Shown: positions 337 through 27,012 of the stretch, one piece after another
Layout: every line of letters begins with the position of its first letter
Position numbering within the stretch: position 1 is the first letter of the stretch
DNA from: Haplodiscus bocki
Lineage: Eukaryota
Assembly: GCA_965655095.1 (NCBI GenBank)
Contig: OZ296654.1
Coordinates: 70,246,001 to 70,310,000 of the forward strand
Direction of reading: 5' to 3'
DNA length: 64,000 nucleotides
Made by a program: the position numbers and the translations under genes
Notes under the pieces: model-generated
What the model was told of the DNA's origin: nothing
What the model saw: the letters and a program-made list of their open reading frames with translations, nothing else
Databases searched by the model: none

Positions 337-544
337 CTTATTGACGTTACCGAATATACAGAGCAGGTTGAACAGTTTTTGTGGTCCAAACTTATCTTCG
401 TCCAAGTTGTGAATCATGAGCACACTAGGAGCATAGTCGTGACCTTCTACTGCCGAACTGGAACCAGCAGCATACGCTCCTGACCCTCGACCATAGGCCA
501 CCAAACCTCCTGGTCCGATGTCATCGATTGGTACGTAAAAGGCT
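337..544 (-). CDS. HNRNPL: hnRNP L-like exon 8, start of RRM3; gene continues beyond the window start
   Basis: tttatttcag acceptor and AAG|gtcagt donor. Encodes ...APSVLMIHNLDEDKFGPQKLFNLLCIFGNVNK, matching SPVLMVYGLD...VFNVFCLYGNVEK. Confidence 0.93.
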
Positions 545-1530
545 CTGAAATAAACGAATCATATTTAGAGAGCACTAATGCACGCTCAAGTCCGATCTTT
601 TTGCAAATAATGAAAAAACTTTCTGGAATCTTTTCATTTGTTTCAACTGCTCATTAATTAAAAAGATTGCTTTCAATTAAAAAGTTGCAAACCATTGCAG
701 TTAGTTTTTTCACCGCGTAAAGAACACTCTTAGCAATCTAAAGGCTCGTCCTTCCTGTCCAATGTTGTCTACTGTGTGACGCAGCTGGTGGCATGCTAGT
801 GGCAGTAAGAACTACAATATTAGCGATGGTCAGCGCTGCGCATAATGGCTTACTAAGCCTCATATGCAGCTGTCTATATCTGGTACCCAGACACAGCACT
901 ATACATACAAGACAATGAAAATTAGATTTTCTGCGCCACGGAAAATGGGTCCAGGCAAAAAGCCGCGTATAACCACCAACCAAAACCATACAAATTTTCT
1001 TGAAAACATCAAAGGGTCCTCCTTAGGAAGTTTCACGGCAATAAGTAAAACCCCCTTTTACACTGAATTTTCTGAAAATTTTTCCAAGCATGAAGGACTC
1101 CCCTTTCAATATGTACCGTTCTCGGCATGTTTTCAAAATCATTCTCAATCTGGGAGATGAGTCACGGTTACTCTGGTGTCCTTTAAAAAGTCATCTTCAT
1201 GTTTACCAAACATTTCGCATTAAGTTATGCGTTTACTTTACCTTGCTTAAAATATGGTAACATGAGAGAAAACCTCCAACGAAACATAACACTGTTTCCA
1301 CCCCTCAATGCTTCCCATATTATTTTGCAAAAAAGGAAATACTTCAAATCGGAGACCAATTTTCTTGAACAACTTCGTTTTCTGATATATTACGACCTGA
1401 GTTCCCTTCAAAAAGTACTTCCACATAATTACGAGCAGCTTAGGACTAACATTTCGAAATGCTCAATTGGAACCTTTTTCAAGACCATTAGAGGTTTTTG
1501 AAAATGAGGTCAAATAGAAATTATACTTAC

Positions 1531-2424: not shown

Positions 2425-2688
2425 CACTAGATTTGATAGCAACATCTTGACCATAGAACCCGGAGTCCAATGCAGTTGCAAGTTCACCTTCACGTCTTCT
2501 GTTTCGTCCAGGGGCGGAAGATTTGATACCACGTGTTTCGTACTCGGGTGCCATCTGCACTGGGGCACCTCCCCTAGAGGATCTCAAGCCCCCGTCGTAA
2601 ACCTGTCTATATATGGCCCCGCCTGTTATTTCAGGAGCAGGTAGAAGACCGGGGTCGATTCGTCCAACTCTTCCAGCTTCAACTCCTT
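2425..2688 (-). CDS. HNRNPL: hnRNP L-like exon 6, Gly/Arg-rich RRM2-RRM3 linker
   Basis: cttctttcacag acceptor and G|gtaagg donor; 264 nt open, phase 1 to 1; GC-richer than its flanks. Confidence 0.82.
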
Positions 2689-5600
2689 CTGTGAAAGAAG
2701 TTAAGGTATTTAATAACAATCAAAAACTAGTCAATTTTGAACAAAAAGGCATGTTGCACAAGACCATGTCTTTTAGTATTCTCATTTGATGTGTACTTCT
2801 TAGGGATGCTGAAAATTGAATTATATATTCAAATCTGAGACAGTTGTTTGACTTCGGTGAAATATTGAATCAGAAGTTTATTGTATCTTCAAAAGGTTAA
2901 GGGTGTCAAAATATGTAAAGCCGAAAGGATTGATGTGCAATAATTTATATTATCATGTGGAAGTTGGCATTCGTCTATTGAATTACTTGACCATTATTAT
3001 GGTGACTATAGTTGTGAAAAAAAAACCATGTATGTTCAAAACACTGCTTTGCACCTATAACCCGTACGGGTGTATAATTTATAAACTCCTCTCATTGTTG
3101 TGTCACTTTAACTTCGGCAGAAAACTGACCGCAATAAATGATTGCAATAAATTTATATTCAAATAGCAATAGCTACGTGTTTTGTGACTAATTGAAGAAA
3201 TACAGCTTAGCTCGAATTGAAAGTACCCCAGATTTGAAAACAATGTAACTTACACCCACGAGTTATAGATAGAGGAAGAATGTCCTATAATAATGACGGA
3301 GTAGTGCTTCCAGAAGTTACTCAAGCAATTTGCGATAGAAGTTTCTTGGAGGAGTATTGCCATAATTGCATTTTGTCCCAAAACACACCAGTTTTTTTAA
3401 TTTTTGTGCAATTCATTTCATATGCCGCGCTAAGCTTTCATCAAATGATTCCATCAATTGTTTTAATAGATTTCAGATTTTCTCATTTAACCTCGAAGCT
3501 AGTACAGATGTGAATATAGTTTAAATTAAAAATAGGTCATATAACATAGTTTCATATGACACGAAATTTCAACTCGTGCGTCCATCTTTGATGATTTTGA
3601 GTCCAACAATATAACTTTGACTCCTCAAGCTGTGGTGAAGTCTGTAGATATGAAATACATTTACAGAATGCAAGTGAGAAATCGGAAGGCTAAAAGTTGA
3701 CTGAACTGAGAAACTTTAGGCAAAAGGGGAACCAATGCAGTAAAATTTACGATAAGGTCTTCGTTGACTCGTGTTTAACAAATGTACACATAGCTATCGT
3801 TTTCTATCATGTCGACTATTTCGTAATGAGCCAAGTATGCATTGAATACAATCCATGATCTAGATTTGAATCAAACTTTTATGACAATTCATCACACACT
3901 CGATCAAAAAACACGAGCTGATGCGCCATGAAACTATGTAGAAGTGCGCCTGTAGTACTCGAGTTGAGTACTCCAATGTTAGACTAAAACTGAACAATTA
4001 GCACTTATCATATGTTGTCGTAAATGATTATTCAAAGCTCACATTTGATACGTTTTGTTCTGATGCTAGGGCTGGCCATGATTTGCAAATTGATCCAACA
4101 AATTAGTTTCGCGTACGAAAATGCCCCCTTCAGGGCACAGAAATTTCTGAGCCAAAATATTTGTCCACCATGAAGCTACCAGTGAAAATTTCTGCTAGTT
4201 TTTGAATTCTTCAGAAAACAAATAAGCTAGTGTGATCACTTTTGTACTGATTTTTAAAAAATGTAAATTGGTTTCCATCATTTTGCACCATGATTCGAAA
4301 ATTTGTGAAATACGATGAGAAAGGGTTTGCTTCACAAAAATAATTTATTTTGATCAGCACATCAGTTTGCAAAATACGAAGGCCAATGCTTTCTGCTTTC
4401 TCCAGTAATTCAAATTTCCTGAAGAAACAACAGTGACAACGAAAGAGCTCCTGACTCATTGGCTAGTTACGCTGCCCAAAAATATTGAATAAGGCTGGTA
4501 GCTGATTGGTTCCAGCGTCTTTCAGCTTATTCAGCGAATACATAGGATGAATAGACAAAACCATAGGCATCAAGGCTGCTAGGCATTAAGCTCTAAGAAT
4601 TTAAAAGAGTGAAAAAAATAAATTTATCACGCCGATTCGCAAAGAAAAGTATGAACTGGCCGAAATCATCAAATATTCCCATTGCGTGAAACATTCGAAG
4701 CATCGAAAGCTTCGAATGGTTTCATAATTTGAATTTTTTTACGTTTTGAAAAGTTTGCATTTTTTTCGACGCTTTGAGAATCAGTTTTTCGACGCCATGA
4801 ATGGCCTTAAATAATCAGGACAGTAAGCAGCAAAGAGTGGTGTCCGTTATAGCTTCAGGAGGCGAAATAGTTAACAAGACGACCGGCTAGCATCGGCATA
4901 TTTTTCGCCCGATTACAAAGTGATCAAATTTTGCAAAAACGAGAATACTATTTCTACGCTAGTTTCCAAAGGTTTTTCACAAAAATCAATTCCACCACAG
5001 ATTTCTACAATTCTTGGCATTATCGACTCCCCTTTTCCCCATAATTATCGCTCCGAATCAAAGTACTAAACTCGAAAATTTCTCTGAACCACCTTCTCAA
5101 AATTCAAAACTAACTCGTGAGATCTTTATCGTGGAAATCCGGCCAGTACTTTTAGATCGAATGAGTCTGACTAAAGACAAAAGCCACTACAAGCCCCACT
5201 TTTGCCAATTTCAACAAAAGAAATTACGAATGCAGGGAACCTATTTCGAAACATGTTTATCGAGTAACCTTATACACAGATAAAATTGTAAACTGAGACC
5301 TTGGCGGAAGAAGTCCAGTCTGTAGTTTTAGAGACAGATGAATTGGAACCTCTCAAGAAAAAACATATGCATATTCAAGTTTTGGAATTTTCAGCCAATC
5401 AAGTTTCCGCTGAGAGCTCAAGTTTTCACATTTGAGTTCCATTCAAAATTTCAAACTTGTCGATTGACGTCTTGATAGAGAAATTCAGACGGTAGCTCTG
5501 GAAAAAATGGATTCCAATACAAAGAAGCATCATACATATGCATAGCTTTTGACAATTGGGGCCTAATAAATTTTCGAGAGAGGATGAAAAAAGTAGACAT

Positions 5601-7744
5601 GAAAATTGAATCAACCTGTACAAAAACACAATTGTTGATTGAGACCTAGACGGAAAGAATCTTGACAGTTGCTTGGAGTGAAACCGAGTTGGAATATCCA
5701 GACGATCAGAACAATATTCAATATTTGGCTAGTTTCGCCCATCAAGTTAGTGCCGCAATGAACTAAATGATTGTTTGGCAATCAAGTACCTTCTTACGAG
5801 TAGAAAAAGGTCAATTCACACCCTGTTGGACCAAACGCTGCCAGCAGTCATGGAGAACAAATTGCTTGATTCAGGAAAAATCGAGACTTTTGCCCTTTCT
5901 GGCTGTTTCGGTCCTTACACTTTCTGATGTAAGAAACGTTTCCCAAAATACTGTTACTGAAAAATGATCAACAATTGCATAAATGCTGATCGAGAAATTC
6001 AGCCAGTTGAAAAAATCGAACTTGGTTATCAAGAAAAATTATACGAAAACGCATTCTTTGGCATTTTCCGACCAACAGGGTTGCGTTGCGAGGAAGGAAG
6101 ACATTCCCGTACGCTTTTACACGTCGTCTGAAATCTTGATGAGCAAAATGAATCCTCTGGTTTTTGAGAAAGGCAGGTTTGTTATTCAGGAAAATCAGAC
6201 CACTTCGACATTTTGGCTCTATCGGTTCATGAGGGTGGCGATGCAAGGATATTTTCCAGGAACACTAGCCATTAGCATCGACCGATGTCCTGCACATAAA
6301 ATTTTACTCACCGAGACCATGATTGAAGTAGAGGTTGTTTTGAAAAGAATCGAGTCCGTTTATCGAGACGATTTAAACAATTATTCATTTATTGACAATT
6401 TTTAGGTATCAGATTTCCGTTCGGAGGAATAAAACACAAAAGTGGACATCGATTCGCAACTTACAAGTAGAAAAAAGTCAACTTGGCCAGAGAAACGTAG
6501 CCGGTAGTTCTGGCGAAAATTTAGGTTTGGGTTGAGAAATATCAGCAATTTTTGTTTAATTCCATCCAGAAAGGTTCCAATTCAAGAGCCGGTATCGAAG
6601 ATATTGTTGATGAAGGATGTTTCGCAAGTAGGAGGGTGTCGACTGAGATATTGACGGAAGGGTTATGGCCAATAGCTATGAAGGAAAATTAGTGCGATTA
6701 TCAGGTTGACCTTACGTGAATGCAGTTCTGGCTAATTTCAGTCACAGGGGTTTCTATTGTAAAGGTCATATAGCAAGAGATTCTTTACTAAAAACTGTTT
6801 TACATGGCGAAAATAGTCGAGTGAGACGTTGCTGGGTCCAAACCAGCAGGTGGTTTTGAAGATAAATACGTTTGAAGTTCGATTTAGCAAGTCACCCGTC
6901 CAATACTTTTAGCAGAATTGATCTTTATTGCATATACCAGCTTCTGAAACCGAAGTCCTCCGATAACGAAGGCACTTCTATCGGTGGAAAAATGTCGATT
7001 GTGGCCTGCTTGAAAAAAGTCCATTCGACCGTTCTGAAAGAATGACCTTCAGTATCGAGGAAAAAACCATATGTTTCTCAAGCTTGGTTTGACTCCAAGT
7101 ACTCTACAATGCACACAATGACGTGTTCCAGGAAAAATGTTCATGAATTGTTTTTTTTTAATGTTTAAGTCCCAGATATGAAAACAATATAACAGGTACT
7201 CGAGGAATCCTTTCAGCAAAACAGTTCAAAATTTCAGACCAGAATTCATTACATCATATGAAAATCTCAAATTCGGATAGTTGAAAAGGATCAAAAATTC
7301 CAATTTCTTGTCAATTTTTCTAAATTCGGAACAAGTTCAATTGATTCATCTATGTGGAAAAAAGGAATCTTTTCAGAAAACAGTAAACCCTAAATTATAT
7401 CGAAGAAAACTGTGAAGTGGAACAAAAAGAACCAAAAATGTACTTAAGTTTCAGGAAACATAAAACCAACTTGAAAAAGATTTGATGCGTTCTATGTTCG
7501 GGTTACCTATCTGCTGTTACACCGCATGTTATATACATGTAATATAGAAGAGGCTAATGGATCTGCAACACGAAGTTCGAGTGACTTTTGAAAATTTGCA
7601 AAAGGAAAAAACTGCAATACTGAACTGACTATTTTCCTTTCCCAAAACTAAGGAACGGTAAATAACACACGCTGAAAATACGTCAAAGTCTACGCTGCTT
7701 ATCTGTCCGGCGCGAAAGCTTCCGTAAATCCTAAAAAGGTACGA

Positions 7745-8470: not shown

Positions 8471-11064
8471 GGAAACCATTGGAAATTCTGACAAATGCCA
8501 GCGATATGATAAAAATATATGGCACGACAGAGATTCAAGCCCGGACCTACTGCTTGAGAAGTTTTTGTCCTAACCTCACTGCCGAGATCTATTTTTGAAT
8601 AAGAAGAGTTAGCAAAAATACACTAAAAACAAAAAAAAGAAAACCCTACTAAATGAATTTTTCTTACATATTCCAAAATATGTGGCGAAAAATAATTCAA
8701 ACTAAAGCTAAGAACTGTGCTTCACTATCACTCAGCCTTGTTCATTCCGTCAATCACTGCACTTCCGCGAAAAAAGTAAAAGCTATAAGCATTGAGTTTC
8801 ACTCAATGCCTAAAAGAAGTTTTGTTTATAAGATCACACTTTCGAGGCTCCGATATAAAAACATAGCCACCCTCATCGTTCCTGCAAATTCGAATAGAGG
8901 CGGAGCAAACTTCGCAACATATTCTGAATCATCCGCTGAAATTAAATACAGGCAGTACACAACGAAGATTCGGAGACATTTGAAAGCATGATCGTAGACG
9001 TGATTGACACTTCTAGAAACAGCTGCTAATCAAGCAAGCCTTTGTTTTATTTAGTCGAATTGACACAAATACCTAAAAAGATGTGGCTTTTCCGTCAAAA
9101 ATGGTATGATCGCGTTTTTCTCGTAAAAAATTTCTCGCTCAGCACTGAAAATTTATTAGAGTGTTTACGGAACAATATATACTGTCTGGGTTGTTAGTTC
9201 AAGTATTTGTGGTATATGTTATATTGGCAAATGCAATGGGGATTTCATGGTCCAAATTTGCTACGTACAAAGATTTTTTTTGCTTCCCTCAAAATAATGA
9301 ATGCCCTGTAAAATTTGGTGCCCGACCAGTTTGTAGCTTTACGAGGTGGGAAAAAGCCACGGTAACATTCGGGCAATTTTCTTATCAAATGCGCCCGACA
9401 TTCTTTCATGAAGTAAATTTAGAGTAAATTTTCGATGTTCTAAAAACGGAAAAATACATCAGAGGAAGCTAAATAAGCAGATTACAGTTTCTGCGAAAAC
9501 AACCGCCCATATAGTGTAGACCTTGGTTTCCTTATTTTTATTCAATTTTTCTAAGACCAGCCCTAGCTTTTACTTTATGTGATTCCAGTGAATTCATCAA
9601 TGAGTCCCTTGCTAAATTTGCAATGGAAATAATTGTTTAGCAGCTGCTTTGTTAGTGCTTGCATTCTTCCTTCATGCCACTGCGAGCCACGAAGATAAAA
9701 TTGGAATATGGTTTTATTTGCTCAGAGATGTCGGTAAGTTATTCATCCTGCTCACAGACAGGTCAATCTTCACGCAAGCAGCACTCTTTGGGTCGTAATG
9801 AACAACGTAATGCTAAGGGTCATTTGATACAATTTGTACATCACAATCCACCATAGTTTCCAAGATGCAGTAGTCAGGACTTATTCCCGTAAAACAACAC
9901 ACCTAGTAATGTAACAACACATCACATTGCCGATGCTTCAGAATATTCCACCAGAATATATTGCCGATACATAATATATCGTCAGCTTGGGGACCGGAAG
10001 TTCTGAGGTTCGATTCCATGTCATGTCATTGCCTTCGTTACTTGATTGCCACTCAAGCTCTGAATGCCCATACAAAAGCCACTTGTAAATATCCTATGGT
10101 CACACGTTGAATTTGGGGGATCGCTGCAATTAGATTGAAAAAGTGTTTCAACACCTGTAACATTGGAATCTCAGCATGCGCGCCAACAGCAACATCATTA
10201 AATATGTCGAAACTGCTGTTGCGTAATTTCGAACAAATCAGAAGCCGAATATTTTGTCGCTATATTCACTCAAAATTCTGTCTCTTAAGATATGCATAAT
10301 ATGAAGTGCCAATGACCAGGGATGGGAAATTTTGATAAAGTGAGCTTCTTAATTTCGTTGATTCGTCAAGCATCTTTTAATTAAATTCATTTCTTGAATT
10401 TTTTCTTGTGGTATTGTCGGGAATGATAGCCCATTTTTTTTTCAAAAAATTAATGTGTACATGATGGTGAATGTTACTTAGTGTTTCATATTTCAAAAGG
10501 TGTTTTCCTTTAAATTCTCTCCCATCAGTGTTCACAGGACAGTTTAGCGAGTGAAATGCTCAGCGAAATATGGCAATTTAGCCGCTGCACCTTTTTGGAT
10601 CATTCCAAGTGAAGTTATTTCCCATAACATGTAACTCCCGAAAATATGGATTTTTCAATCGGTTTATGGGAGAGGCAGTCTTGAATATCATGTGATCGTG
10701 TTTCGCAAAGGTAAAGGTGTTCGCATTCACGCTTTGTTTCTGATTCTGAAACAACTTCTGACTTCTGAAAGGATCCTTTATTTGATGACGTTCAGCGTGA
10801 CCTCTTTCCATCTGCTGTATAGTCATTGGTTGTTTATTGTTTAAATACCTGTTGTATTGATTTGTTGATCTGTCTCAAATGCCGAAGCGATGCAGTAGTG
10901 ATGCAATGCATTGATCTCGTCATTCCCTTTCTCTGTCTTTCTATTAATCTTGTACTTGCATTTCATTATCTTCTGCTTGTCCCACAAAAGGTGCTTGTGT
11001 CTGTTGTGAGTGGCCCTTAATATCAATGAAAATAAATCTTACATTTTGCAGAAAACGGACTCAC

Positions 11065-11165
11065 ATCCAAAGCGACTTGACCACCTGACACAACTTTGAA
11101 CTCCGAATGAACTCTGATGTAAGGTAATATCGTCTTCACCAATCGAACGAGAAGCGACAATTGGT
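11065..11165 (-). other. Candidate poison (frameshifting) cassette exon, 101 nt
   Basis: gggtttttcag acceptor and GAT|gtgagt donor, 130 nt downstream of exon 5. Inclusion puts TAA at 2628-2626 of the next exon in frame. Confidence 0.5.
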
Positions 11166-11295
11166 CTGAAAAACCCAATCACGTATCTTCATCAACTGTC
11201 AATCAAATGAAAAATGTCGATTGACATGACCCCTGAAAAAAGTAAAAACCACAGTAGCTTCAACACAAAACTTCCATATGCTTCACTATAATAAC

Positions 11296-11356
11296 CTTCA
11301 GCCAATTTCGCATTGTACGTGTCCTCTGTATTTCTCGTGACCTTCAAAGTCTCCGG
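11296..11356 (-). CDS. HNRNPL: hnRNP L-like exon 5 (PETLKVTRNTEDTYNAKLAE), equivalent of vertebrate exon 6
   Basis: gttttag acceptor and a weak gttatt donor; 61 nt, phase 0 to 1, bridging exons 4 and 6. Aligns by eye with PTRLNVFKNDQDTWDY. Confidence 0.82.
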
Positions 11357-14300
11357 CTAAAACATGGAACGACACCAGTTAAAAGTTTGTATAAATCGAG
11401 ATTAGATTACCGTCCATTCATTTGAAAAACCTGAAGATTTCTAACACATTTTTATCCGTTCTGACAAAATATCGCACCCAACCTCAATCTTTGAACCCTT
11501 CGTACCACAGTATTGCACCACTAGCAAAAGCTTGACGCTAAGAGGAAGTGATGCAATTTTATCAGCGAAGAGAAGTTGCGGCTCAAAATTGAGAGAGCTG
11601 CCGCTAAGCGGATACTTGGATGGTTCGACACACATCATGATATCATTCAATACAAAAAGTGAAACATCTGGAATAACTTAAAACCTCTGAAATAGCTAAG
11701 AAAATCGGTGCAAATTTTTAATGAAAACTTGTTTTTTTCTGAAAAGGAACAATATATGGTCCAAAAGCAAAGTAAGAACTTCTCCACTTCAACATTATCT
11801 CCCTAAGCTCCGCAAAAAATGGAAAAAACTCATTTCGAGATTTTCGTGAAGTTAGCGATTAGTTGGTTTCAAAAAGCAGCTTTAGCAAGCAATCCTCACA
11901 AAAGCGATATTTGTGATTAGTCATTTTCTATTAGCGATGCAATACACCCTTTCGTATCTAAACATGAAACTGAGAAAAGATATATGGTTGGTGAAAGAAT
12001 TTCAAGAAAAATCGACACCAAATTTGCAAATTCTTGAATTGGAGTCATCAGAGTTGCTGACTAAGATGGTTGAAAACGATGATATACTCATAATAGCCGA
12101 AAAATTCAATTGGTTAATTAATTTCTGAAATTGCAAAATACTTGAGGCCAGTGAATTGCTCACTCACTAAATATGCGCTTTCCGACGCTTGCACTATTTC
12201 CCAATTCGTTTTCCGCTTATGACACTCGTTGATACTCCATTTCCGCTAATGGAGTTTTACACTGAAAACAGTAAAGCTGTGTTGAAAGTAAACGCATCAT
12301 AGCACAAATCCCAAATTCGAATATCACAAAAACCATTAGTATTTTTCAAAAATTGCCCGTTCTAAAAGTTTCGTAGAGTTTTATCTAGTTTACAATCGTT
12401 TTTGTTTGAAACGTCTACGGTCAAAATTGCAAAAGTTACCAATAACCATTTTTGGACAAACTTGGCTCAAACTGGCGGTTTTTTCATATTAGATCAGCGG
12501 GAAAAAAATTTTTCCGGCGAATTTTATAATCAAAAAACTTCCTTCACCATCCTGAAGCCACTGATATATTTTGAATCAAAAACGAATTTGAATTAGTAAA
12601 AATATCGGGCTCCGAAAATAGAGATTTTCGAATTTACATGTATTAACATAGGATTTTAAAATTTGCAAATTTTAAAACTTCCATTTTATAGAAACACTTT
12701 ACATAACTTTGACATTGAGAGACTTCAAGAGATTCAGGTGATTTTTTTGGGAAGAAAAATTTGGCGAAAAGAAATTTATAACACACTCAAAATTAGGTAG
12801 AACTGCAAAATCAAGAAAAATTGTCTCAAGTGGACCAATAGTATTTCTGCATTTATCTTACTTAGCCATCGAGATTTCTCAAATTAGGTCTATTTGAGTT
12901 CCTTAATGCGTTTGTTTTCAACACTACTGTAGATAGCCACCAATCAACATAATGGGCGTTATCTAGTTGAGCGATTCTGTGACAATAAATGGAACTTCGG
13001 GGTGTATTTCTAGGAAGGAAGCCTAAAAGGGAGAAGTTTTGTTAACTTCCAAAAATTAGCCGCTAAAAGGGATCATCAGGAAGAATTGAGGATTATTTTA
13101 ACAAAACTAGCTATCAAAAAATTTTGAGCAAAACTCACTAAATAGTGAATGGAATTCATCCATTGACGCGATTGATTGGAACCAGAAAAAAATTTTCACG
13201 AGTTGCCAAAGATAAAAATCTGAACTCGCCATTTTTGTCAACGCAATTTGAGAGCTTGCTTTTACGTCCAACCTCCACGCGTTGCATTTATTTCACTCAT
13301 ATTTGTTAATGTCACGCACTGACACGCGCTTCCTGAGTGTACAAAAATTCAGGAAAATTTCATAGCATCGGTCAAAATTGATGATTGGTCAAAAGCTAGA
13401 CAATCAGGTTGTAAAATACAATCAATCTTATAAACGTAGATACTGCCGGAAAAGTCGCACAAAATCAGTTTGCCAGTATAAAAAGCATAGCGTGCTGTGA
13501 TGAAGAAATGGCACAAAAGGCTTTGAAAAGGAAATGGGACTTCACTTTTTGTCGTCTGATAATCAATTGACACAACTTTTTATTCTTTGGCTTTCAAGAT
13601 TTATGCTAAAAAATTGATATCAAATCTTAGAGTGCTGATATTCGGTGGTTTGTAAAACCTTCTTGAACTTATTTTCGACGATTTTAATTTTACCTCAGAT
13701 CTCATATTTGCTCATCCAAGAAATTACATTTTCAATTTCTTTCAATCTGAACCCACATCTTATCAACTCGCGGCGATAATTGATTTTTCGAAACTGCCAA
13801 ACTTTCAAGAAAATCGACAAATCTTGAGCATAAAACAATATGCAATCTTAATACATGCAAAAGCAAATTTGTCTGTCCAAATAGTCATTTTCTTCTTTTA
13901 ATGCAGAATGACATATTTTAATACCGTAAAAGGCACTTTCTGGCAGAAATTGAGGGATGTTGGTCTCAAAAAATAAATTCTTTGCCAAATGGGTTGAAAT
14001 ACGTCAAAAAATTTATTGATGGCTCCAGGAGCAGAAACTTCAAGGGCCTATATTCTATAATACAGATACAATTTTTTCAAACAAAATCCATAGTAATCTA
14101 CTAAAAAAATATAAGAAACTTTGGCTCCTGGAACTTCCTTGTAAGTTTGCTAGATTTTTAAACATTCAGCTGTCCCATTCCTTTTTCACAACTTTATGTT
14201 TCATTTCTTCATCACCGCACTGAATTTAAAGTAGGCAAGATTGAGGGCATAAAAGAGCCATAGTGTTCGAATTCTGACATTTTGTTTAATTTTCAGGTAG

Positions 14301-14722: not shown

Positions 14723-15023
14723 CCGAGCATATTCAATTTTGAGAGTGCAGCATCCGGAATAGATATCAGCTCCGTCCAAACTTTTCTTAATCTGGATGGC
14801 AGTTTCTACGTCAGCAAATTCGACCATGGCCTGCACTCCACGTCTGCGGAATATGTAAATCTTGATGGGCTGAGCATTGAACTTGCTGCACACATCCATG
14901 ATCACTTTCACGTCTATCGGGTAGTCCGGTCTGAGGATCGTGAATAGTAAAACTTTGTTCACCCGCTCTTTAACTCCATTTTCCATCCTAGAACCACCCC
15001 CGTTTGCGTAATGCTCGTCGGGT
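14723..15023 (-). CDS. HNRNPL: hnRNP L-like exon 4, RRM2
   Basis: ttttgcag acceptor and gttggt donor; 301 nt, phase 2 to 0. VNKVLLFTIL...GVQAMVEF...LDGADIYSGCCTLKIEYAR is near-identical to hnRNP L RRM2. Confidence 0.96.
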
Positions 15024-16065: not shown

Positions 16066-16560
16066 CGAGTAGACATTGATCCGTGAATTGATCTATAATT
16101 GGAGGCTGTGTACGACGATACAGCAGAGAGGCTGTTAGCTTTTGAAGAGTGATGGCGGTTGTAATCTGACGGAGCACCTGAATCCAGATACGCCGCTGCA
16201 GTGCTGCTCCCTACACTTCCCCCTCTAATATGTTGACTGTTGTGGAGGCTGTGGTGATCGCTATAGAATCCTGCACTGCTGTTCAGATCAGATACAACAA
16301 CTGACTGTGGCGGTGGAGCCAACGAGTTGATACTACTGCCTGAGGGGGGATGGTTGCCGGTTACGGAGGCGAGGGGTGAGGAGCTTGAGTTTGAAGAATT
16401 TGAGGATATAGTTTGAATGGGAGAGAACGTTATCTGTGGGACACAGTTGCTAATGTTTATACATTGCCGCTGATGTTGCAGTTGTAACACATGCTCCGCG
16501 TCTTCCACACACTCAAATTCTACCAAGGCCTGACCTTTGTTAGACAGCAAGAAACAATCT
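16066..16560 (-). CDS. HNRNPL: hnRNP L-like exon 3, rest of RRM1 plus long Ser/His-rich linker
   Basis: ttcttttttatccag acceptor and gttagt donor; 495 nt, phase 2 to 2. DCFLLSNKGQALVEFE matches YVVVMPKKRQALVEFE of hnRNP L. Confidence 0.93.
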
Positions 16561-23388: not shown

Positions 23389-26220
23389 TTAAAAAATAAT
23401 TTCGTAGACAACGTTACTGAGTTGAAATTCCTCTACTAGCTTCTTGACATGTTTCGAGTCCACTTGCTGTTTGGAGCTACGACTTAGGCACGGCAGAGGC
23501 GCGTTTAAACCTAAGAGGTAGTTCGAAAGTTTACATCCACGGTACCGTACAGAGTGTCTACTTTTAGAACTTTTAGCACATGGTAGCTCAAAGAGTCCCA
23601 AATTGGTACTCCTCGTACTCATCGACTGCGTATCTTTAACTGCGAATAAAGAATTTAAACAGGTTGTTGGACAGAGGTTACTAGTAGATTGTATGCAGAA
23701 CTTGAGAAGTTCGATGGTGTACATGTCGTATACATTCGATGTTCCGGTCACTTCAAATAAGTCACTAGTGTGCGACATTTTCGATAAGCAAAGAATTATT
23801 TTCAATACCTTTTTCTGCATATAAAAAACAGGCAGTGATTGAGTTTTTGAGGTGCACCCATACACGAGAAGACCGTATGAAATTATAGGTTTCACGTACA
23901 CGTTGTAATATCGAATAAGGAAATTTCTCGATACCAATTGACGCAGTCTGAATAAAACATTCAGATGTTTTGATATTTTTGTCACAACTTTATGTATATG
24001 ATGTGGAAAATTCAGTTTGTGATCAATGTACACACCCAAATAATTGACTACATTCTGCCGATCTATTATTTTACCATCCAAAATCACATCATGATACGGT
24101 AATCCAATCTGTAATACCTGCGTTTTTTCGACATTCAAAGCTAGTCCATTTGTGTTCGTCCAATCTTTTACTTTTTCAAGTTCATCGTTGAGACCAAACA
24201 ATTCATCTTTTTTGATCGAGTATAAACAATTGGCATCATCTGCGAAAAGAAAAGTTTCAAGAAGCGAAGATACACATGGGAAGTCATTCATGAAAATAAT
24301 GAATAGCAGTGGTCCCAAAATCGATCCCTGTGGAACGCCAGACATAACTAATTGAGAAGCGGAACGAGTTTTATTTATTTGAACGCACTGATATCTATTA
24401 TTTAAATATGATTCAAACCATGCAAGTGCAGTCCCACGGATACCATAGATTTCTAATTTCATAAGTAATCGTTCATGATTTACAGTGTCAAAAGCTTTCC
24501 GCAAATCCAATAGCACCGATGTATGTTGAAATTCACTCTCTCGAAGTCGCTCTGTTATTTCAATCAGGGCGTGGCATGTTGAATGACCCGACCTGAATCC
24601 AAACTGCTTGTGATGGAGAAGTTTGAATTTATCAACAAAAGAGCAGACCCTGTTATGAACTGCTTTTTCTAAAACTTTACTTACTGTAGATAATAAAGAA
24701 ATAGACCGGTAGTTGTCAGCACAAGTCTTTGGTCCCTTTTTGTGTAGAGGAATTACCCGAGAGATCTTTAAACAATCGGAAAAAACTCCAATTTCCAGTG
24801 ATTCATTACATAGCTGTAATAACATGAGACAAATTACAGGGAAACTACATTTTAAAATTTCGGAAGATATTCCATCTAGACCAGTTGCCTTGTGATCCCG
24901 AAGTTTAAAAATAATGTTTTCTAATTCAGGAAGACTCATAGGATAGAAGAAAATTGAGTTTGCACTATTGCATACCTTTCTCAGGCAATGATTGTTGTGA
25001 AGAGGATCAATCGGGAGCCCAACTGTACCGGTGAACTTCTCATTAAAAGTGTTGGCTATTTCGAGTTCATCTGTAATTTTTTCATTCGAACCATCATTCA
25101 AGAGTATCTTTGTATGTTGTTTGTGTCGACCACAAAGGGAATTTAACACTTTGTAGAACTTCTTTGGCGCGGCTAAAGTTTCGTTCAAATAACTTTCAAA
25201 ATAGTCTTTTTTGGCTAACCTGATTATTTCTATTGTTTTATTGCGTTGCTTTCTATAGCATCTTTCGTCATGAAGGTTCCTAGTTTTGCAGAAACGTTTG
25301 TAGAGCTTCTGCTTTTTAGTTATGGTGTTTTTAATTTCGTTCGTTATCCATTTTTCGGAATTCTCACGTACCGTTTTAGTGCATGTATGCAGCATGACTG
25401 TGGTACTAAGTGTTTGTAAAAAATTGCCGAACTTATCGTCAAGATTCTGTTCATTATGAATCTCAGTAAACTCATTGTTAAGATCGTTGAGAAAGGAAAC
25501 GAGTGCTTCACTATTTTTCAAAAAAGGCATAGACTATTTCCCTTTTGTTCGATTTTATCTCCATTGGTGTTTCAAAAAAAGTGGCAGAGTGATCAGTGAT
25601 TCCCAATTTCTTGACCCCTGCCTTTTTCTTGCATTTGCTATTGTGTATAACATGATCAATAAGAGTAGACGTACTGCATGTAATCCTGGTAGGTTCATGG
25701 ATTTCTTGAATAAAACCATGTTTTTCTAAGATACTGAGATAGTCAGAGACAGTAGAAATATAACAAAGTAGATCAATGTTCATACCACCCAAAATGAAGC
25801 AAGGACTGTCAAATGTACTAACTTTTTCGATCCCAATCTCAAAATCACGCAAAAAACAAGTTACTCACTGACGGAGAATTATAAATGCATGCAACAAAAA
25901 ACTGTACTCCTGGTTTTGAAACACATTTCACCAAGATAGCATTCAAGTTAGTTGCGATTTTCACTTCTTCGAACCATATTGATTCATGAAGAAAAATAAC
26001 TACACCATGGTTTCGTTTTTTGCCATGTTTTTGCAGTGGTGCACTAAACCCTGGTATAGTGTAGATTCTGGTATCTGTGTTTTCTGTTAACCACGCTTCA
26101 CTTAGGCAAATCACACTTGGTTTTTTCGAACCCAAAATTTCCAAGTAAGTATGCAAAACATCAAAATTTTTTGAAATTGATGTGATATTCAGATGGAAGA
26201 AGCACTCGCCACCGTTCCTT
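23389..26220 (-). pseudogene. LINE ORF2 (endonuclease + reverse transcriptase) with two frameshifts (~25852 and ~25520)
   Basis: ORF-track pieces 25845-26156, 25511-25852 and 23389-25530 join into one APE-RT protein. Confidence 0.9.
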
Positions 26221-26269
26221 TTTTCTTTTGATTTTAGAAAACTTCTCTTATGTTTGGGAAGGCCCCCTC

Positions 26270-27012
26270 TTAAAAATTTAGACTTTCTTTACAAGATGAC
26301 ATAACTAAAGCTGGATTCCATTTATACACTTCAGCTAAATTGTTGAAAACAGTTTTCTTGCCTTGGATGTCATACAAGGTTATCTTTTCATTTTGCATCA
26401 CTACTGTTTTCATATCTTCAATTTCACGCAATTTAGCGGAAATCTTCGATCTCAGTGGAGTCAAATCATCATTGATGTAGATTTGATGCTCGCCTTCTTT
26501 CAGCTTCTTTTTGTTGCGCATAATCTCTAACATTGTTTCGCGCCTGACAAATTTAACAATTAAAGGTTTTTTACCTCGTCTACTGGGGAGCCGATGACAT
26601 ACACTGATATCTGTCTTTTTGATATTCACTCCTACCAGTTTTGCTACATGCACCACTACATCGTAGGGGTTCTCGGGTTCTCGTCTTTGGCCTCGTCCAG
26701 TCCGAATATCCTGATGTTGTCTCTACGTCCATACTGCTCATTCGCATCTGATTGGAGTAGGGAGAAGAGCTTCGATGTGTCATCTGGTTTGGCATCGATG
26801 GTTGTTGCTTTCAGCTCAGCCACCTCAGCCGCCGCACAGAAGCCACACAGAAATGGTCTCTCCATGAAACCTCGTGGTACTCGCTTCGGTAGCCAGGTGG
26901 GAACCCACGCTGGACACGGACTGCCATCTGGAGCCGTGCCAGTACAGCCAAACAGGTGCGTCATCCCATCATCATCTGCATCTGAGGTCGATCCAATCCT
27001 TTTTGGTGGCAT
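26270..27012 (-). pseudogene. LINE ORF1 split by an 8-bp duplication frameshift
   Basis: ORFs 26656-27012 and 26270-26656; gggttctc is duplicated at 26667-26682. Confidence 0.88.

What the first reader, a model, noticed from the sequence alone, without database searches (positions are those of the whole stretch)
11065..11165. Candidate poison exon in the intron equivalent to vertebrate hnRNP L intron 6 (exon 6A position)
Seen: a 101-nt segment with gggtttttcag/gtgagt splice sites lies 130 nt after the exon equivalent to vertebrate exon 6. It stays open in the incoming frame (DQLSLLVRLVK...QVALD) but shifts the next exon so that TAA at 2628-2626 is read about 200 nt upstream of the next junction, which is NMD geometry. 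Known (recalled): vertebrate HNRNPL autoregulates through frameshifting exon 6A in intron 6. Inference: this invertebrate has an equivalent unproductive-splicing feedback loop at the same intron, either deeply conserved or convergent.
Basis: partly seen in the sequence, partly recalled or inferred. Interest (0 to 1): 0.8.

Follow-up and report, generated by a model that had tools for sequence, protein, structure and literature searches.

The report
Unconfirmed poison exon beside CA-rich tract
The 101-base "poison exon" in this flatworm-like hnRNP L gene is present exactly as described, but it is no better than chance pseudo-exons and the only RNA contig skips it. The non-random feature is a CA-rich tract just downstream that sits at the same place in a related species.

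Summary

The signal is not above chance. Seven AG..GT pairs in this 8.6-kb intron score at least as well on both sites, and random introns give about 4. Ninety-seven percent of pseudo-exons here would create a premature stop.

The one RNA contig available (low depth) joins 14723^11356 and 11296^2688, so it skips the segment. The segment is single copy. It shows no similarity to the orthologous intron of a relative (L002).

The intron does match, in position and phase, the intron after the bird exon PTRLNVF...SGQ.

A tract directly 3' of the candidate (about 11035-10811) has the highest CA-dinucleotide density on the sense strand of the whole 64 kb. L002's intron peaks at the same offset. Strict CACA/ACAC motifs are not enriched.

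The 61-nt upstream exon has weak donors in three relatives.

Verdict: splicing control at this intron is plausible, but this particular exon is unproven (about 0.2). An earlier scan note (s1-369320) covers the same gene's 3' end.

The parts
11065..11165 (-). Candidate 101-nt cassette (the finding). Acceptor ...gggtttttcag|ACC, donor GAT|GTGAGT. Open in frame, shifts the frame by +2.
   Evidence: Skipped in the only RNA contig. Single copy. No similarity in L002 or L006.
11296..11356 (-). Constitutive 61-nt exon (PETLKVTRNTEDTYNAKLAE plus 1 nt) with weak sites (acceptor score 4.7, donor AAG|GTTATT score about 3). Homologue of the bird exon PTRLNVF...SGQ.
   Evidence: RNA contig of run X1 spans 14723^11356 and 11296^2688. 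Orthologues are in L002, L006 and L003, all 61 nt with the same phases. Bird exon. Scores.
11166..11232 (-). Possible 5' extension of the cassette from a much stronger upstream acceptor (tttttacttttttcag|GGG, exon start 11232, score 11.5). With donor 11065 this gives a 168-nt exon that carries in-frame TGA TGA.
   Evidence: No RNA evidence.
11043..11064 (-). Possible 3' extension to a second donor, AAT|GTAAGA (exon end 11043, score 6.1). The motif AAATGTAAG recurs at a similar offset in L002 and L006. The variant 11165..11043 = 123 nt makes a TAA across the junction.
   Evidence: Three-way k-mer sharing is at chance level, so this is only a lead.
10811..11035 (-). CA-dinucleotide-rich, TG-poor tract directly 3' of the candidate. 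It has 28 CA per 200 nt, the maximum of the whole sense strand of the window.
   Evidence: L002's intron has its maximum (27 per 200 nt) at offset +250, against +280 here. 3 of 300 and 5 of 300 shuffles reach the observed maxima. The other introns checked in the two genes have lower maxima (19-22 per 200 nt); in L002 none shows an early peak, while the window's intron after RRM2 has a smaller one (22 at +140). Strict CACA/ACAC motifs are not enriched.
10853..10940 (-). Block inside the CA-rich tract with weak local similarity to the intron of relative L006 (tail positions 223-312, where that contig ends).
   Evidence: z is about 3.0-3.7, and 0-6 of 300 shuffles reach the score. Other 500-nt pieces of the same intron score lower.
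2425..2688 (-). Next constitutive exon (acceptor tttcacag|AAGGAG). TAA at 2628-2626 is read after a +2 shift.
   Evidence: The loose end of the X1 contig equals the first 30 nt of this exon.
14723..15023 (-). RRM2 exon of the hnRNP L-like gene (ends ...KIEYAR, phase 0).
   Evidence: Pfam RRM_8, E = 1.1e-8. X1 contig. Homologues.

Best explanation
The 101-nt segment as drawn is most likely an ordinary intronic pseudo-exon. It is a chance AG...GT pair lying in the first 250 nt of a long intron that is normally removed whole, by joining 11296 to 2688.

The non-random feature here is its setting.
- The 61-nt upstream exon has weak splice sites in three related species.
- It is followed, 260-480 nt into the intron, by a strand-specific CA-rich tract whose position is kept in a distant relative.

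Inferred, not shown: this tract is a binding platform for a CA-binding splicing regulator, with hnRNP L itself the obvious candidate, and it acts on splice-site choice around the weak 61-nt exon.

Which outcome it controls cannot be decided from the data at hand. The possibilities are efficient use of the weak donor, a cassette using the donors at 11065 or 11043, read-through of the donor, or skipping of the 61-nt exon.
For: - Chance level of the site pair.
- The premature stop is automatic for 97% of pseudo-exons.
- The only RNA contig (X1, 270 nt, depth 3.4) shows 14723^11356 and 11296^2688.
- No similarity of the segment to L002, L006 or L003.
- The CA tract is the top of 6380 sense-strand windows (28 against a mean of 13.0, sd 3.5) and is TG-poor. 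L002's maximum is at the same offset. The other introns have lower maxima (19-22).
- Weak similarity of the tract to L006.
- Weak donors of the 61-nt exon in the window, L002 and L006 (scores 3.0-3.6).
- hnRNP L binds CA-rich intronic RNA. Sites downstream of an exon are reported to activate it and sites upstream to repress it: PMC7547044.
Against: - One low-depth RNA contig cannot exclude a rare, NMD-degraded isoform.
- The donor GAT|GTGAGT is among the six best in the intron, and a donor of similar strength lies at almost the same offset in L002 (+229 against +231).
- A CA-rich tract downstream of a cassette fits the published activation map.
Confidence: 0.5

Rival explanations
1. A cassette covering 11165..11065 (or variants from acceptor 11232 and/or to donor 11043) is included when hnRNP L is abundant, activated through the CA-rich tract just downstream. 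Inclusion gives a premature stop and mRNA decay, which makes negative feedback at the intron homologous to the vertebrate one.
For: - All four site combinations give a premature stop.
- The donor is strong, and a comparable donor lies at the same offset in L002.
- The CA-rich tract starts about 30 nt after the donor and is position-conserved.
- A downstream CA-rich site is reported to activate the upstream exon (PMC7547044).
- The intron is homologous in position and phase to the bird intron after PTRLNVF...SGQ.
- An unidentified eukaryote has an isoform pair, L012 and L013, that differ by a 76-nt frameshifting insert exactly at this junction.
Against: - No inclusion is seen in RNA.
- The acceptor is mediocre (score 5.3), and other AGs lie between the likely branch site and this AG.
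- The pair is at chance level.
- The exon sequence and the acceptor position are not conserved.
- In vertebrates the cluster is described as lying upstream of exon 6A, not downstream (PMC7547044).
Confidence: 0.2
2. Feedback exists but uses another unproductive outcome at the same place. One option is read-through of the weak donor of the 61-nt exon, or use of a downstream alternative donor. The other is skipping of the 61-nt exon, comparable to PTB exon-11 skipping. Either way a premature stop results.
For: - Read-through hits a stop after 34 codons, and skipping the 61-nt exon reads the same TAA 2628-2626.
- The cDNA-like contig L003 of a relative is spliced through RRM1, RRM2 and the 61-nt exon, then runs 117 nt past the donor into a stop.
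- Gene models of a bivalve and an annelid (P0070, P0090) end by reading through the same donor.
- The donors are weak in three relatives.
- PTB autoregulates by exon skipping (PMC7547044).
Against: - L003 may simply be partly spliced pre-mRNA.
- P0070 and P0090 may be annotation artefacts.
- The X1 contig shows the 61-nt exon included and its donor used.
Confidence: 0.15
3. The CA-rich tract is a plain intronic splicing enhancer that helps the weak donor of the 61-nt exon, like the CA-repeat enhancers described in vertebrate introns. It has no feedback role, and the 101-nt segment is irrelevant.
For: The donor is weak, the tract lies downstream of it, and both are kept in relatives. hnRNP L is reported to activate splicing from downstream CA-rich sites (PMC7547044). 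The eNOS CA-repeat example is recalled from memory, not checked here.
Against: The tract starts 260 nt from the donor. If hnRNP L were the activator, the loop would be positive, which is unusual for splicing regulators (PMC4379411 reviews negative loops).
Confidence: 0.15

Closest known systems
Vertebrate HNRNPL exon 6A (also called exon 7) autoregulatory poison exon (Rossbach et al. 2009, as summarised in PMC7547044 and PMC6885243)
   Same: The host gene is orthologous. The intron follows the homologous small exon after RRM2, with the same phases as in a bird. A cassette here would give a premature stop. A CA-rich tract lies next to it.
   Different: Inclusion is not shown. The vertebrate exon carries its own in-frame stop, while the 101-nt form acts by frameshift. 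The vertebrate cluster is described as immediately upstream of the exon and is rich in CACA/ACAC (bird control: 57 observed against 21 expected). Here the tract is downstream and only CA-dinucleotide-rich. No conservation of the exon is detectable between the relatives.
PTB (PTBP1) autoregulation by exon 11 skipping
   Same: PTB is a paralogous RRM protein family. Skipping the weak 61-nt exon here would likewise frameshift into a stop.
   Different: No skipped isoform was seen, and the only RNA contig includes the exon.
Unproductive splicing of splicing factors, conserved in principle but evolutionarily flexible in detail (Lareau and Brenner 2015, PMC4379411)
   Same: A splicing regulator gene with candidate stop-introducing events in a conserved intron. 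An unrelated eukaryote shows a 76-nt frameshifting insert at the same junction (L012 against L013).
   Different: For this genome the event itself is hypothetical.

Membership tests
hnRNP L exon-6A-type autoregulatory poison exon | Host gene is an hnRNP L orthologue | tested here: met
   Pfam RRM_8 and RRM_5 on the exons. The closest named proteins are all hnRNP L, L-like or L2.
hnRNP L exon-6A-type autoregulatory poison exon | Lies in the intron homologous to the vertebrate intron that holds exon 6A | tested here: inconclusive
   The 61-nt exon and the bird 73-nt exon (L005 4986-5058) share position and both phases. The bird intron has significant CACA/ACAC clusters. The vertebrate transcript ORF P0139 ends shortly after that exon, but where it leaves the normal sequence was not established. 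I did not locate exon 6A itself in the bird, and the exon numbering rests on the literature.
hnRNP L exon-6A-type autoregulatory poison exon | The alternative exon is actually spliced into some mRNAs | tested here: inconclusive
   The only RNA contig (X1, depth 3.4) skips it. Contigs drop rare isoforms, and no other RNA run was served.
hnRNP L exon-6A-type autoregulatory poison exon | Inclusion creates a premature stop upstream of a later exon junction | tested here: met
   TAA 2628-2626 lies 201 nt before the donor at 2425. This is also true of 204 of 211 pseudo-exons in the intron.
hnRNP L exon-6A-type autoregulatory poison exon | Adjacent CA-rich hnRNP L binding cluster | tested here: inconclusive
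   CA-dinucleotide density is maximal for the whole sense strand just 3' of the exon and is position-conserved in L002. CACA/ACAC motifs are not enriched (49 observed against 64 expected). Binding is untested.
hnRNP L exon-6A-type autoregulatory poison exon | Exon and flanks conserved among related species | tested here: not met
   The segment shows no similarity above shuffles in L002, L006 or L003. Only the downstream tract shows weak similarity to L006. The relatives are distant (about 62-78% amino-acid identity in RRM2), so this test is weak.
hnRNP L exon-6A-type autoregulatory poison exon | Isoform is NMD-sensitive and its inclusion depends on the hnRNP L level | not testable with these tools
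   Needs knock-down or NMD-block experiments.

The most novel reading that the evidence does not exclude
hnRNP L autoregulates through unproductive splicing at the same intron in an acoel-like invertebrate as in vertebrates. A CA-rich platform next to a cryptic exon or donor does the sensing, and the spliced unit has turned over between lineages. In that case the position of the feedback module dates back to early bilaterians while its sequence does not.
Probability: 0.25. Interest if true: 0.65.

Novelty: new member of a known kind. Interest (0 to 1): 0.4.

Why it matters
Poison-exon feedback in splicing regulators is well documented in vertebrates, and for SR proteins across kingdoms. For hnRNP L it is described only in vertebrates in the papers I could read.

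If an early-branching bilaterian lineage used the same intron, the location of the control module would be ancient even though its sequence is not. As it stands, the finding offers a concrete and cheap test: a handful of named junctions and one CA-rich tract. It is not yet a result.

Tried and rejected
- **Repeat or transposon origin of the segment:** rejected. It is unique in the window and single copy by depth.
- **Known RNA family in the gene region 1-22000:** none found.
- **Strict hnRNP L motif cluster (CACA/ACAC):** not enriched in the window or L002 introns. The same scan is clearly positive in the bird control.
- **Sequence conservation of the candidate in L002:** none.
- **An apparent equivalent 107-nt pseudo-exon in L002, seen by eye:** its acceptor scores below 3 and it is not among the better pairs of that intron.
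- **Three-way shared k-mers among the window, L002 and L006:** at chance level.
- **A second relative (L001, extended by L004):** no 61-nt exon within 14 kb after RRM2, so not usable.
- **L003 tail against all introns:** no similarity.
- **Search for full-length acoel-type transcripts or truncated isoforms:** none in the collection.
- **The 93-nt conserved block as a coding exon:** the indels against L006 are not multiples of three, so it is not coding.
- **Rossbach et al. 2009:** could not be read.
- **Source of L006:** the accession prefix was not found in any paper.

Full report
**Observation**

- The RRM2 exon is 15023..14723 and ends ...KIEYAR in phase 0.
- A 61-nt exon, 11356..11296, encodes PETLKVTRNTEDTYNAKLAE plus one base. 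Its donor is AAG|GTTATT.
- The candidate is 11165..11065 (101 nt), with acceptor gggtttttcag|ACC and donor GAT|GTGAGT. It starts 130 nt after the 61-nt exon.
- The next exon starts at 2688 after tttcacag.
- The candidate is open in the incoming frame. Because 101 = 3n+2, it shifts the next exon into TAA 2628-2626, 201 nt before the donor at 2425.

**Gene identity and intron homology**

The exons carry Pfam RRM_8 and RRM_5. The closest named proteins are hnRNP L, L-like or L2 from many animals.

In the cuckoo Centropus bengalensis (L005), the exon encoding PTRLNVFKNDQDTWDYTNPNLSGQ (4986-5058, 73 nt) begins in phase 0 right after ...IEYAK and ends in phase 1. The 61-nt exon here has the same phases. 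A vertebrate transcript ORF (P0139) ends shortly after that exon; where it leaves the normal sequence was not established.

The claim that this is the intron equivalent to the vertebrate autoregulatory intron is therefore reasonable. I did not locate exon 6A itself in the bird. I left the N runs of that locus untouched and used no human sequence. Some human RNA letters were printed by a supplement look-up and were not used in any search.

The papers I could read say the vertebrate exon carries an in-frame stop and that hnRNP L binds just upstream of it (PMC6885243, PMC7547044). Rossbach et al. 2009 itself is not held.

An earlier scan note (s1-369320) calls the organism an acoel flatworm. I did not verify the taxon.

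**Is the pattern more than chance?**

No.
- The candidate scores 5.3 (acceptor) and 8.0 (donor).
- Seven AG..GT pairs of 30-300 nt in this 8607-nt intron are at least as good on both sites.
- Markov-1 random introns give 4.0 on average, and 91% contain at least one.
- The whole window holds 52 and 38 such pairs on its two strands.
- 204 of 211 pseudo-exons in the intron would place a stop before the next junction, so the NMD geometry carries no information.
- A much better acceptor lies at 11232 (score 11.5). A second donor lies at 11043 (AAT|GTAAGA). All four combinations give a premature stop.

**RNA evidence**

Only five public runs were served. Four are DNA-like, with flat depth across the intron. 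This also shows that the segment is single copy, while 12255-13040, 13437-13830 and 14028-14224 are high-copy repeats.

The fifth run (X1, guessed RNA, 320 million letters) gives one 270-nt contig at depth 3.4. It lies on 14882-14723, then on 11356-11296, then continues with letters that are the exact start of the exon at 2688.
- This confirms both constitutive junctions and shows the candidate skipped.
- It cannot exclude a rare, decay-prone isoform.
- A protein search with a 415-aa relative's ORF found no acoel-type transcripts that could have shown truncated isoforms.

**Relatives**

Three related loci carry the 61-nt exon.
- L002 is an ENA genome contig. The 61-nt exon is 13563-13623, the intron is 2821 nt and the next exon starts at 16445.
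- L006 is a 1.6-kb genomic contig holding 314 nt of the intron.
- L003 is a JGI cDNA-like contig.
- A fourth locus (L001 with L004) has RRM2 but no 61-nt exon within 14 kb.

The candidate segment has no similarity above shuffles in any of them. These species are distant, with about 62-78% identity in RRM2, so the test is weak.

**What is non-random nearby**

Prompted by hnRNP L's known preference for CA-rich RNA, I scanned the intron.

Strict CACA/ACAC motifs are not enriched:
- window: 49 observed against 64 expected;
- L002: 26 against 24;
- bird control: 57 against 21, with 10-11 per 100 nt, reached by 0-1 of 300 shuffles.

Plain CA-dinucleotide density gives a different picture.
- In the window it peaks at intron positions 260-480 (about 11035-10811) with 28 per 200 nt. 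This is the highest of all 6380 sense-strand windows in the 64 kb (mean 13.0, sd 3.5), and TG is depleted there.
- L002's intron has its maximum (27 per 200 nt) at +250.
- The other introns checked have lower maxima (19-22 per 200 nt). In L002 none shows an early peak, but the window's intron after RRM2 has a smaller one (22 at +140).
- Three of 300 and 5 of 300 shuffles reach these maxima. The chance that two maxima coincide within about 30 nt is of the order of 0.01.
- This was my second metric, so some discount for multiple testing applies.

Inside the tract, 10940-10853 shows weak similarity to the end of L006 (z about 3).

A donor-like AAATGTAAG occurs at +249, +225 and +178 in the three species. 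Three-way k-mer sharing is at chance level, however.

The donors of the 61-nt exon are weak in the window, L002 and L006 (scores 3.0-3.6).

**Other unproductive forms at this junction**

- L003 is spliced through RRM1, RRM2 and the 61-nt exon, then runs 117 nt past the donor into a stop. This could be intron retention, an alternative donor or simply pre-mRNA.
- Two metatranscriptome contigs of an unidentified eukaryote (L012, L013) are identical except for a 76-nt insert in L012 exactly after the equivalent exon. The insert ends in a pyrimidine run plus TAG, so it looks like an alternative 3' splice site. It shifts the frame into a stop.
- Short gene models of a bivalve and an annelid read through the same donor.

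These cases show that this junction is prone to stop-introducing variants in several lineages. They say nothing direct about the 101-nt segment.

**Reading**

The segment as drawn is most likely a chance pseudo-exon (about 0.5 for 'not a used exon, while the neighbouring tract is the real element').

It is helped by the strong donor, by a similar donor at the same offset in L002, and by a downstream CA-rich tract, which matches the published activating arrangement (PMC7547044).

Feedback by donor read-through or by skipping of the 61-nt exon gets about 0.15. A plain enhancer for the weak donor also gets about 0.15.

Every functional statement about the tract is inference. No binding, knock-down or NMD data exist.

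**Novelty and score**

If real, this would be a new member of a known kind, namely unproductive-splicing feedback in a splicing regulator (PMC4379411). The interesting twist would be a conserved location with a non-conserved sequence.

The central event is unobserved and the pattern is at chance level, so I score interest at 0.4. The conserved CA-rich tract keeps it from being lower.

Noticed in passing
L012:639-714 versus L013:673|674: Two JGI metatranscriptome contigs of an unidentified eukaryote hnRNP L-like gene are 100% identical except for a 76-nt frameshifting insert exactly at the junction after the exon equivalent to the 61-nt exon. The insert ends ttcttcttttgcttag, so it is probably an alternative 3' splice site. 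The resulting stop is at L012 nt 895.
   Followed up: partly
L003:1189-1305: A cDNA-like contig of a relative is spliced through RRM1, RRM2 and the 61-nt exon, then continues 117 nt past the donor AAG|GTAATG into an in-frame stop. This could be intron retention, an alternative donor or pre-mRNA.
   Followed up: partly
window 23389-27012 (minus strand): LINE-like element inside an upstream intron of the gene. It has a 713-aa ORF with Pfam RVT_1 (E = 4.8e-36), preceded by further ORFs at 25511-26156 and 26270-27012.
   Followed up: no
window 12255-13040, 13437-13830, 14028-14224: High-copy repeats in the intron between RRM2 and the 61-nt exon. Summed DNA contig depth runs from hundreds to tens of thousands, against about 6-50 for the flanks.
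   Followed up: no
window 540-552 (minus strand): The exon after 2425 needs the second AG of tttcagag|CC to keep the frame. The first AG would shift it. This may be a tandem acceptor and is unverified by RNA.
   Followed up: no
P0070, P0090, P0139: A bivalve and an annelid gene model (240 aa each) end by reading through the donor of the same small exon. A vertebrate Logan transcript ORF (235 aa) ends just after that exon.
   Followed up: partly
L005:5770-5870 and 6660-6900: The bird intron after the homologous exon has significant CACA/ACAC clusters. The first is followed by a strong acceptor near 5952. The second lies in a tandem-repeat-like stretch.
   Followed up: partly
L001:15983-17566: An array with a period of about 387 nt lies in the long intron after RRM2 of another relative. 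It shows up as evenly spaced tblastn hits.
   Followed up: no
window 14789, 14828, 14834: The RNA contig of run X1 (organism A) differs from the window at three exon positions in 160 nt. It therefore comes from another strain or a close species rather than the assembled individual.
   Followed up: no
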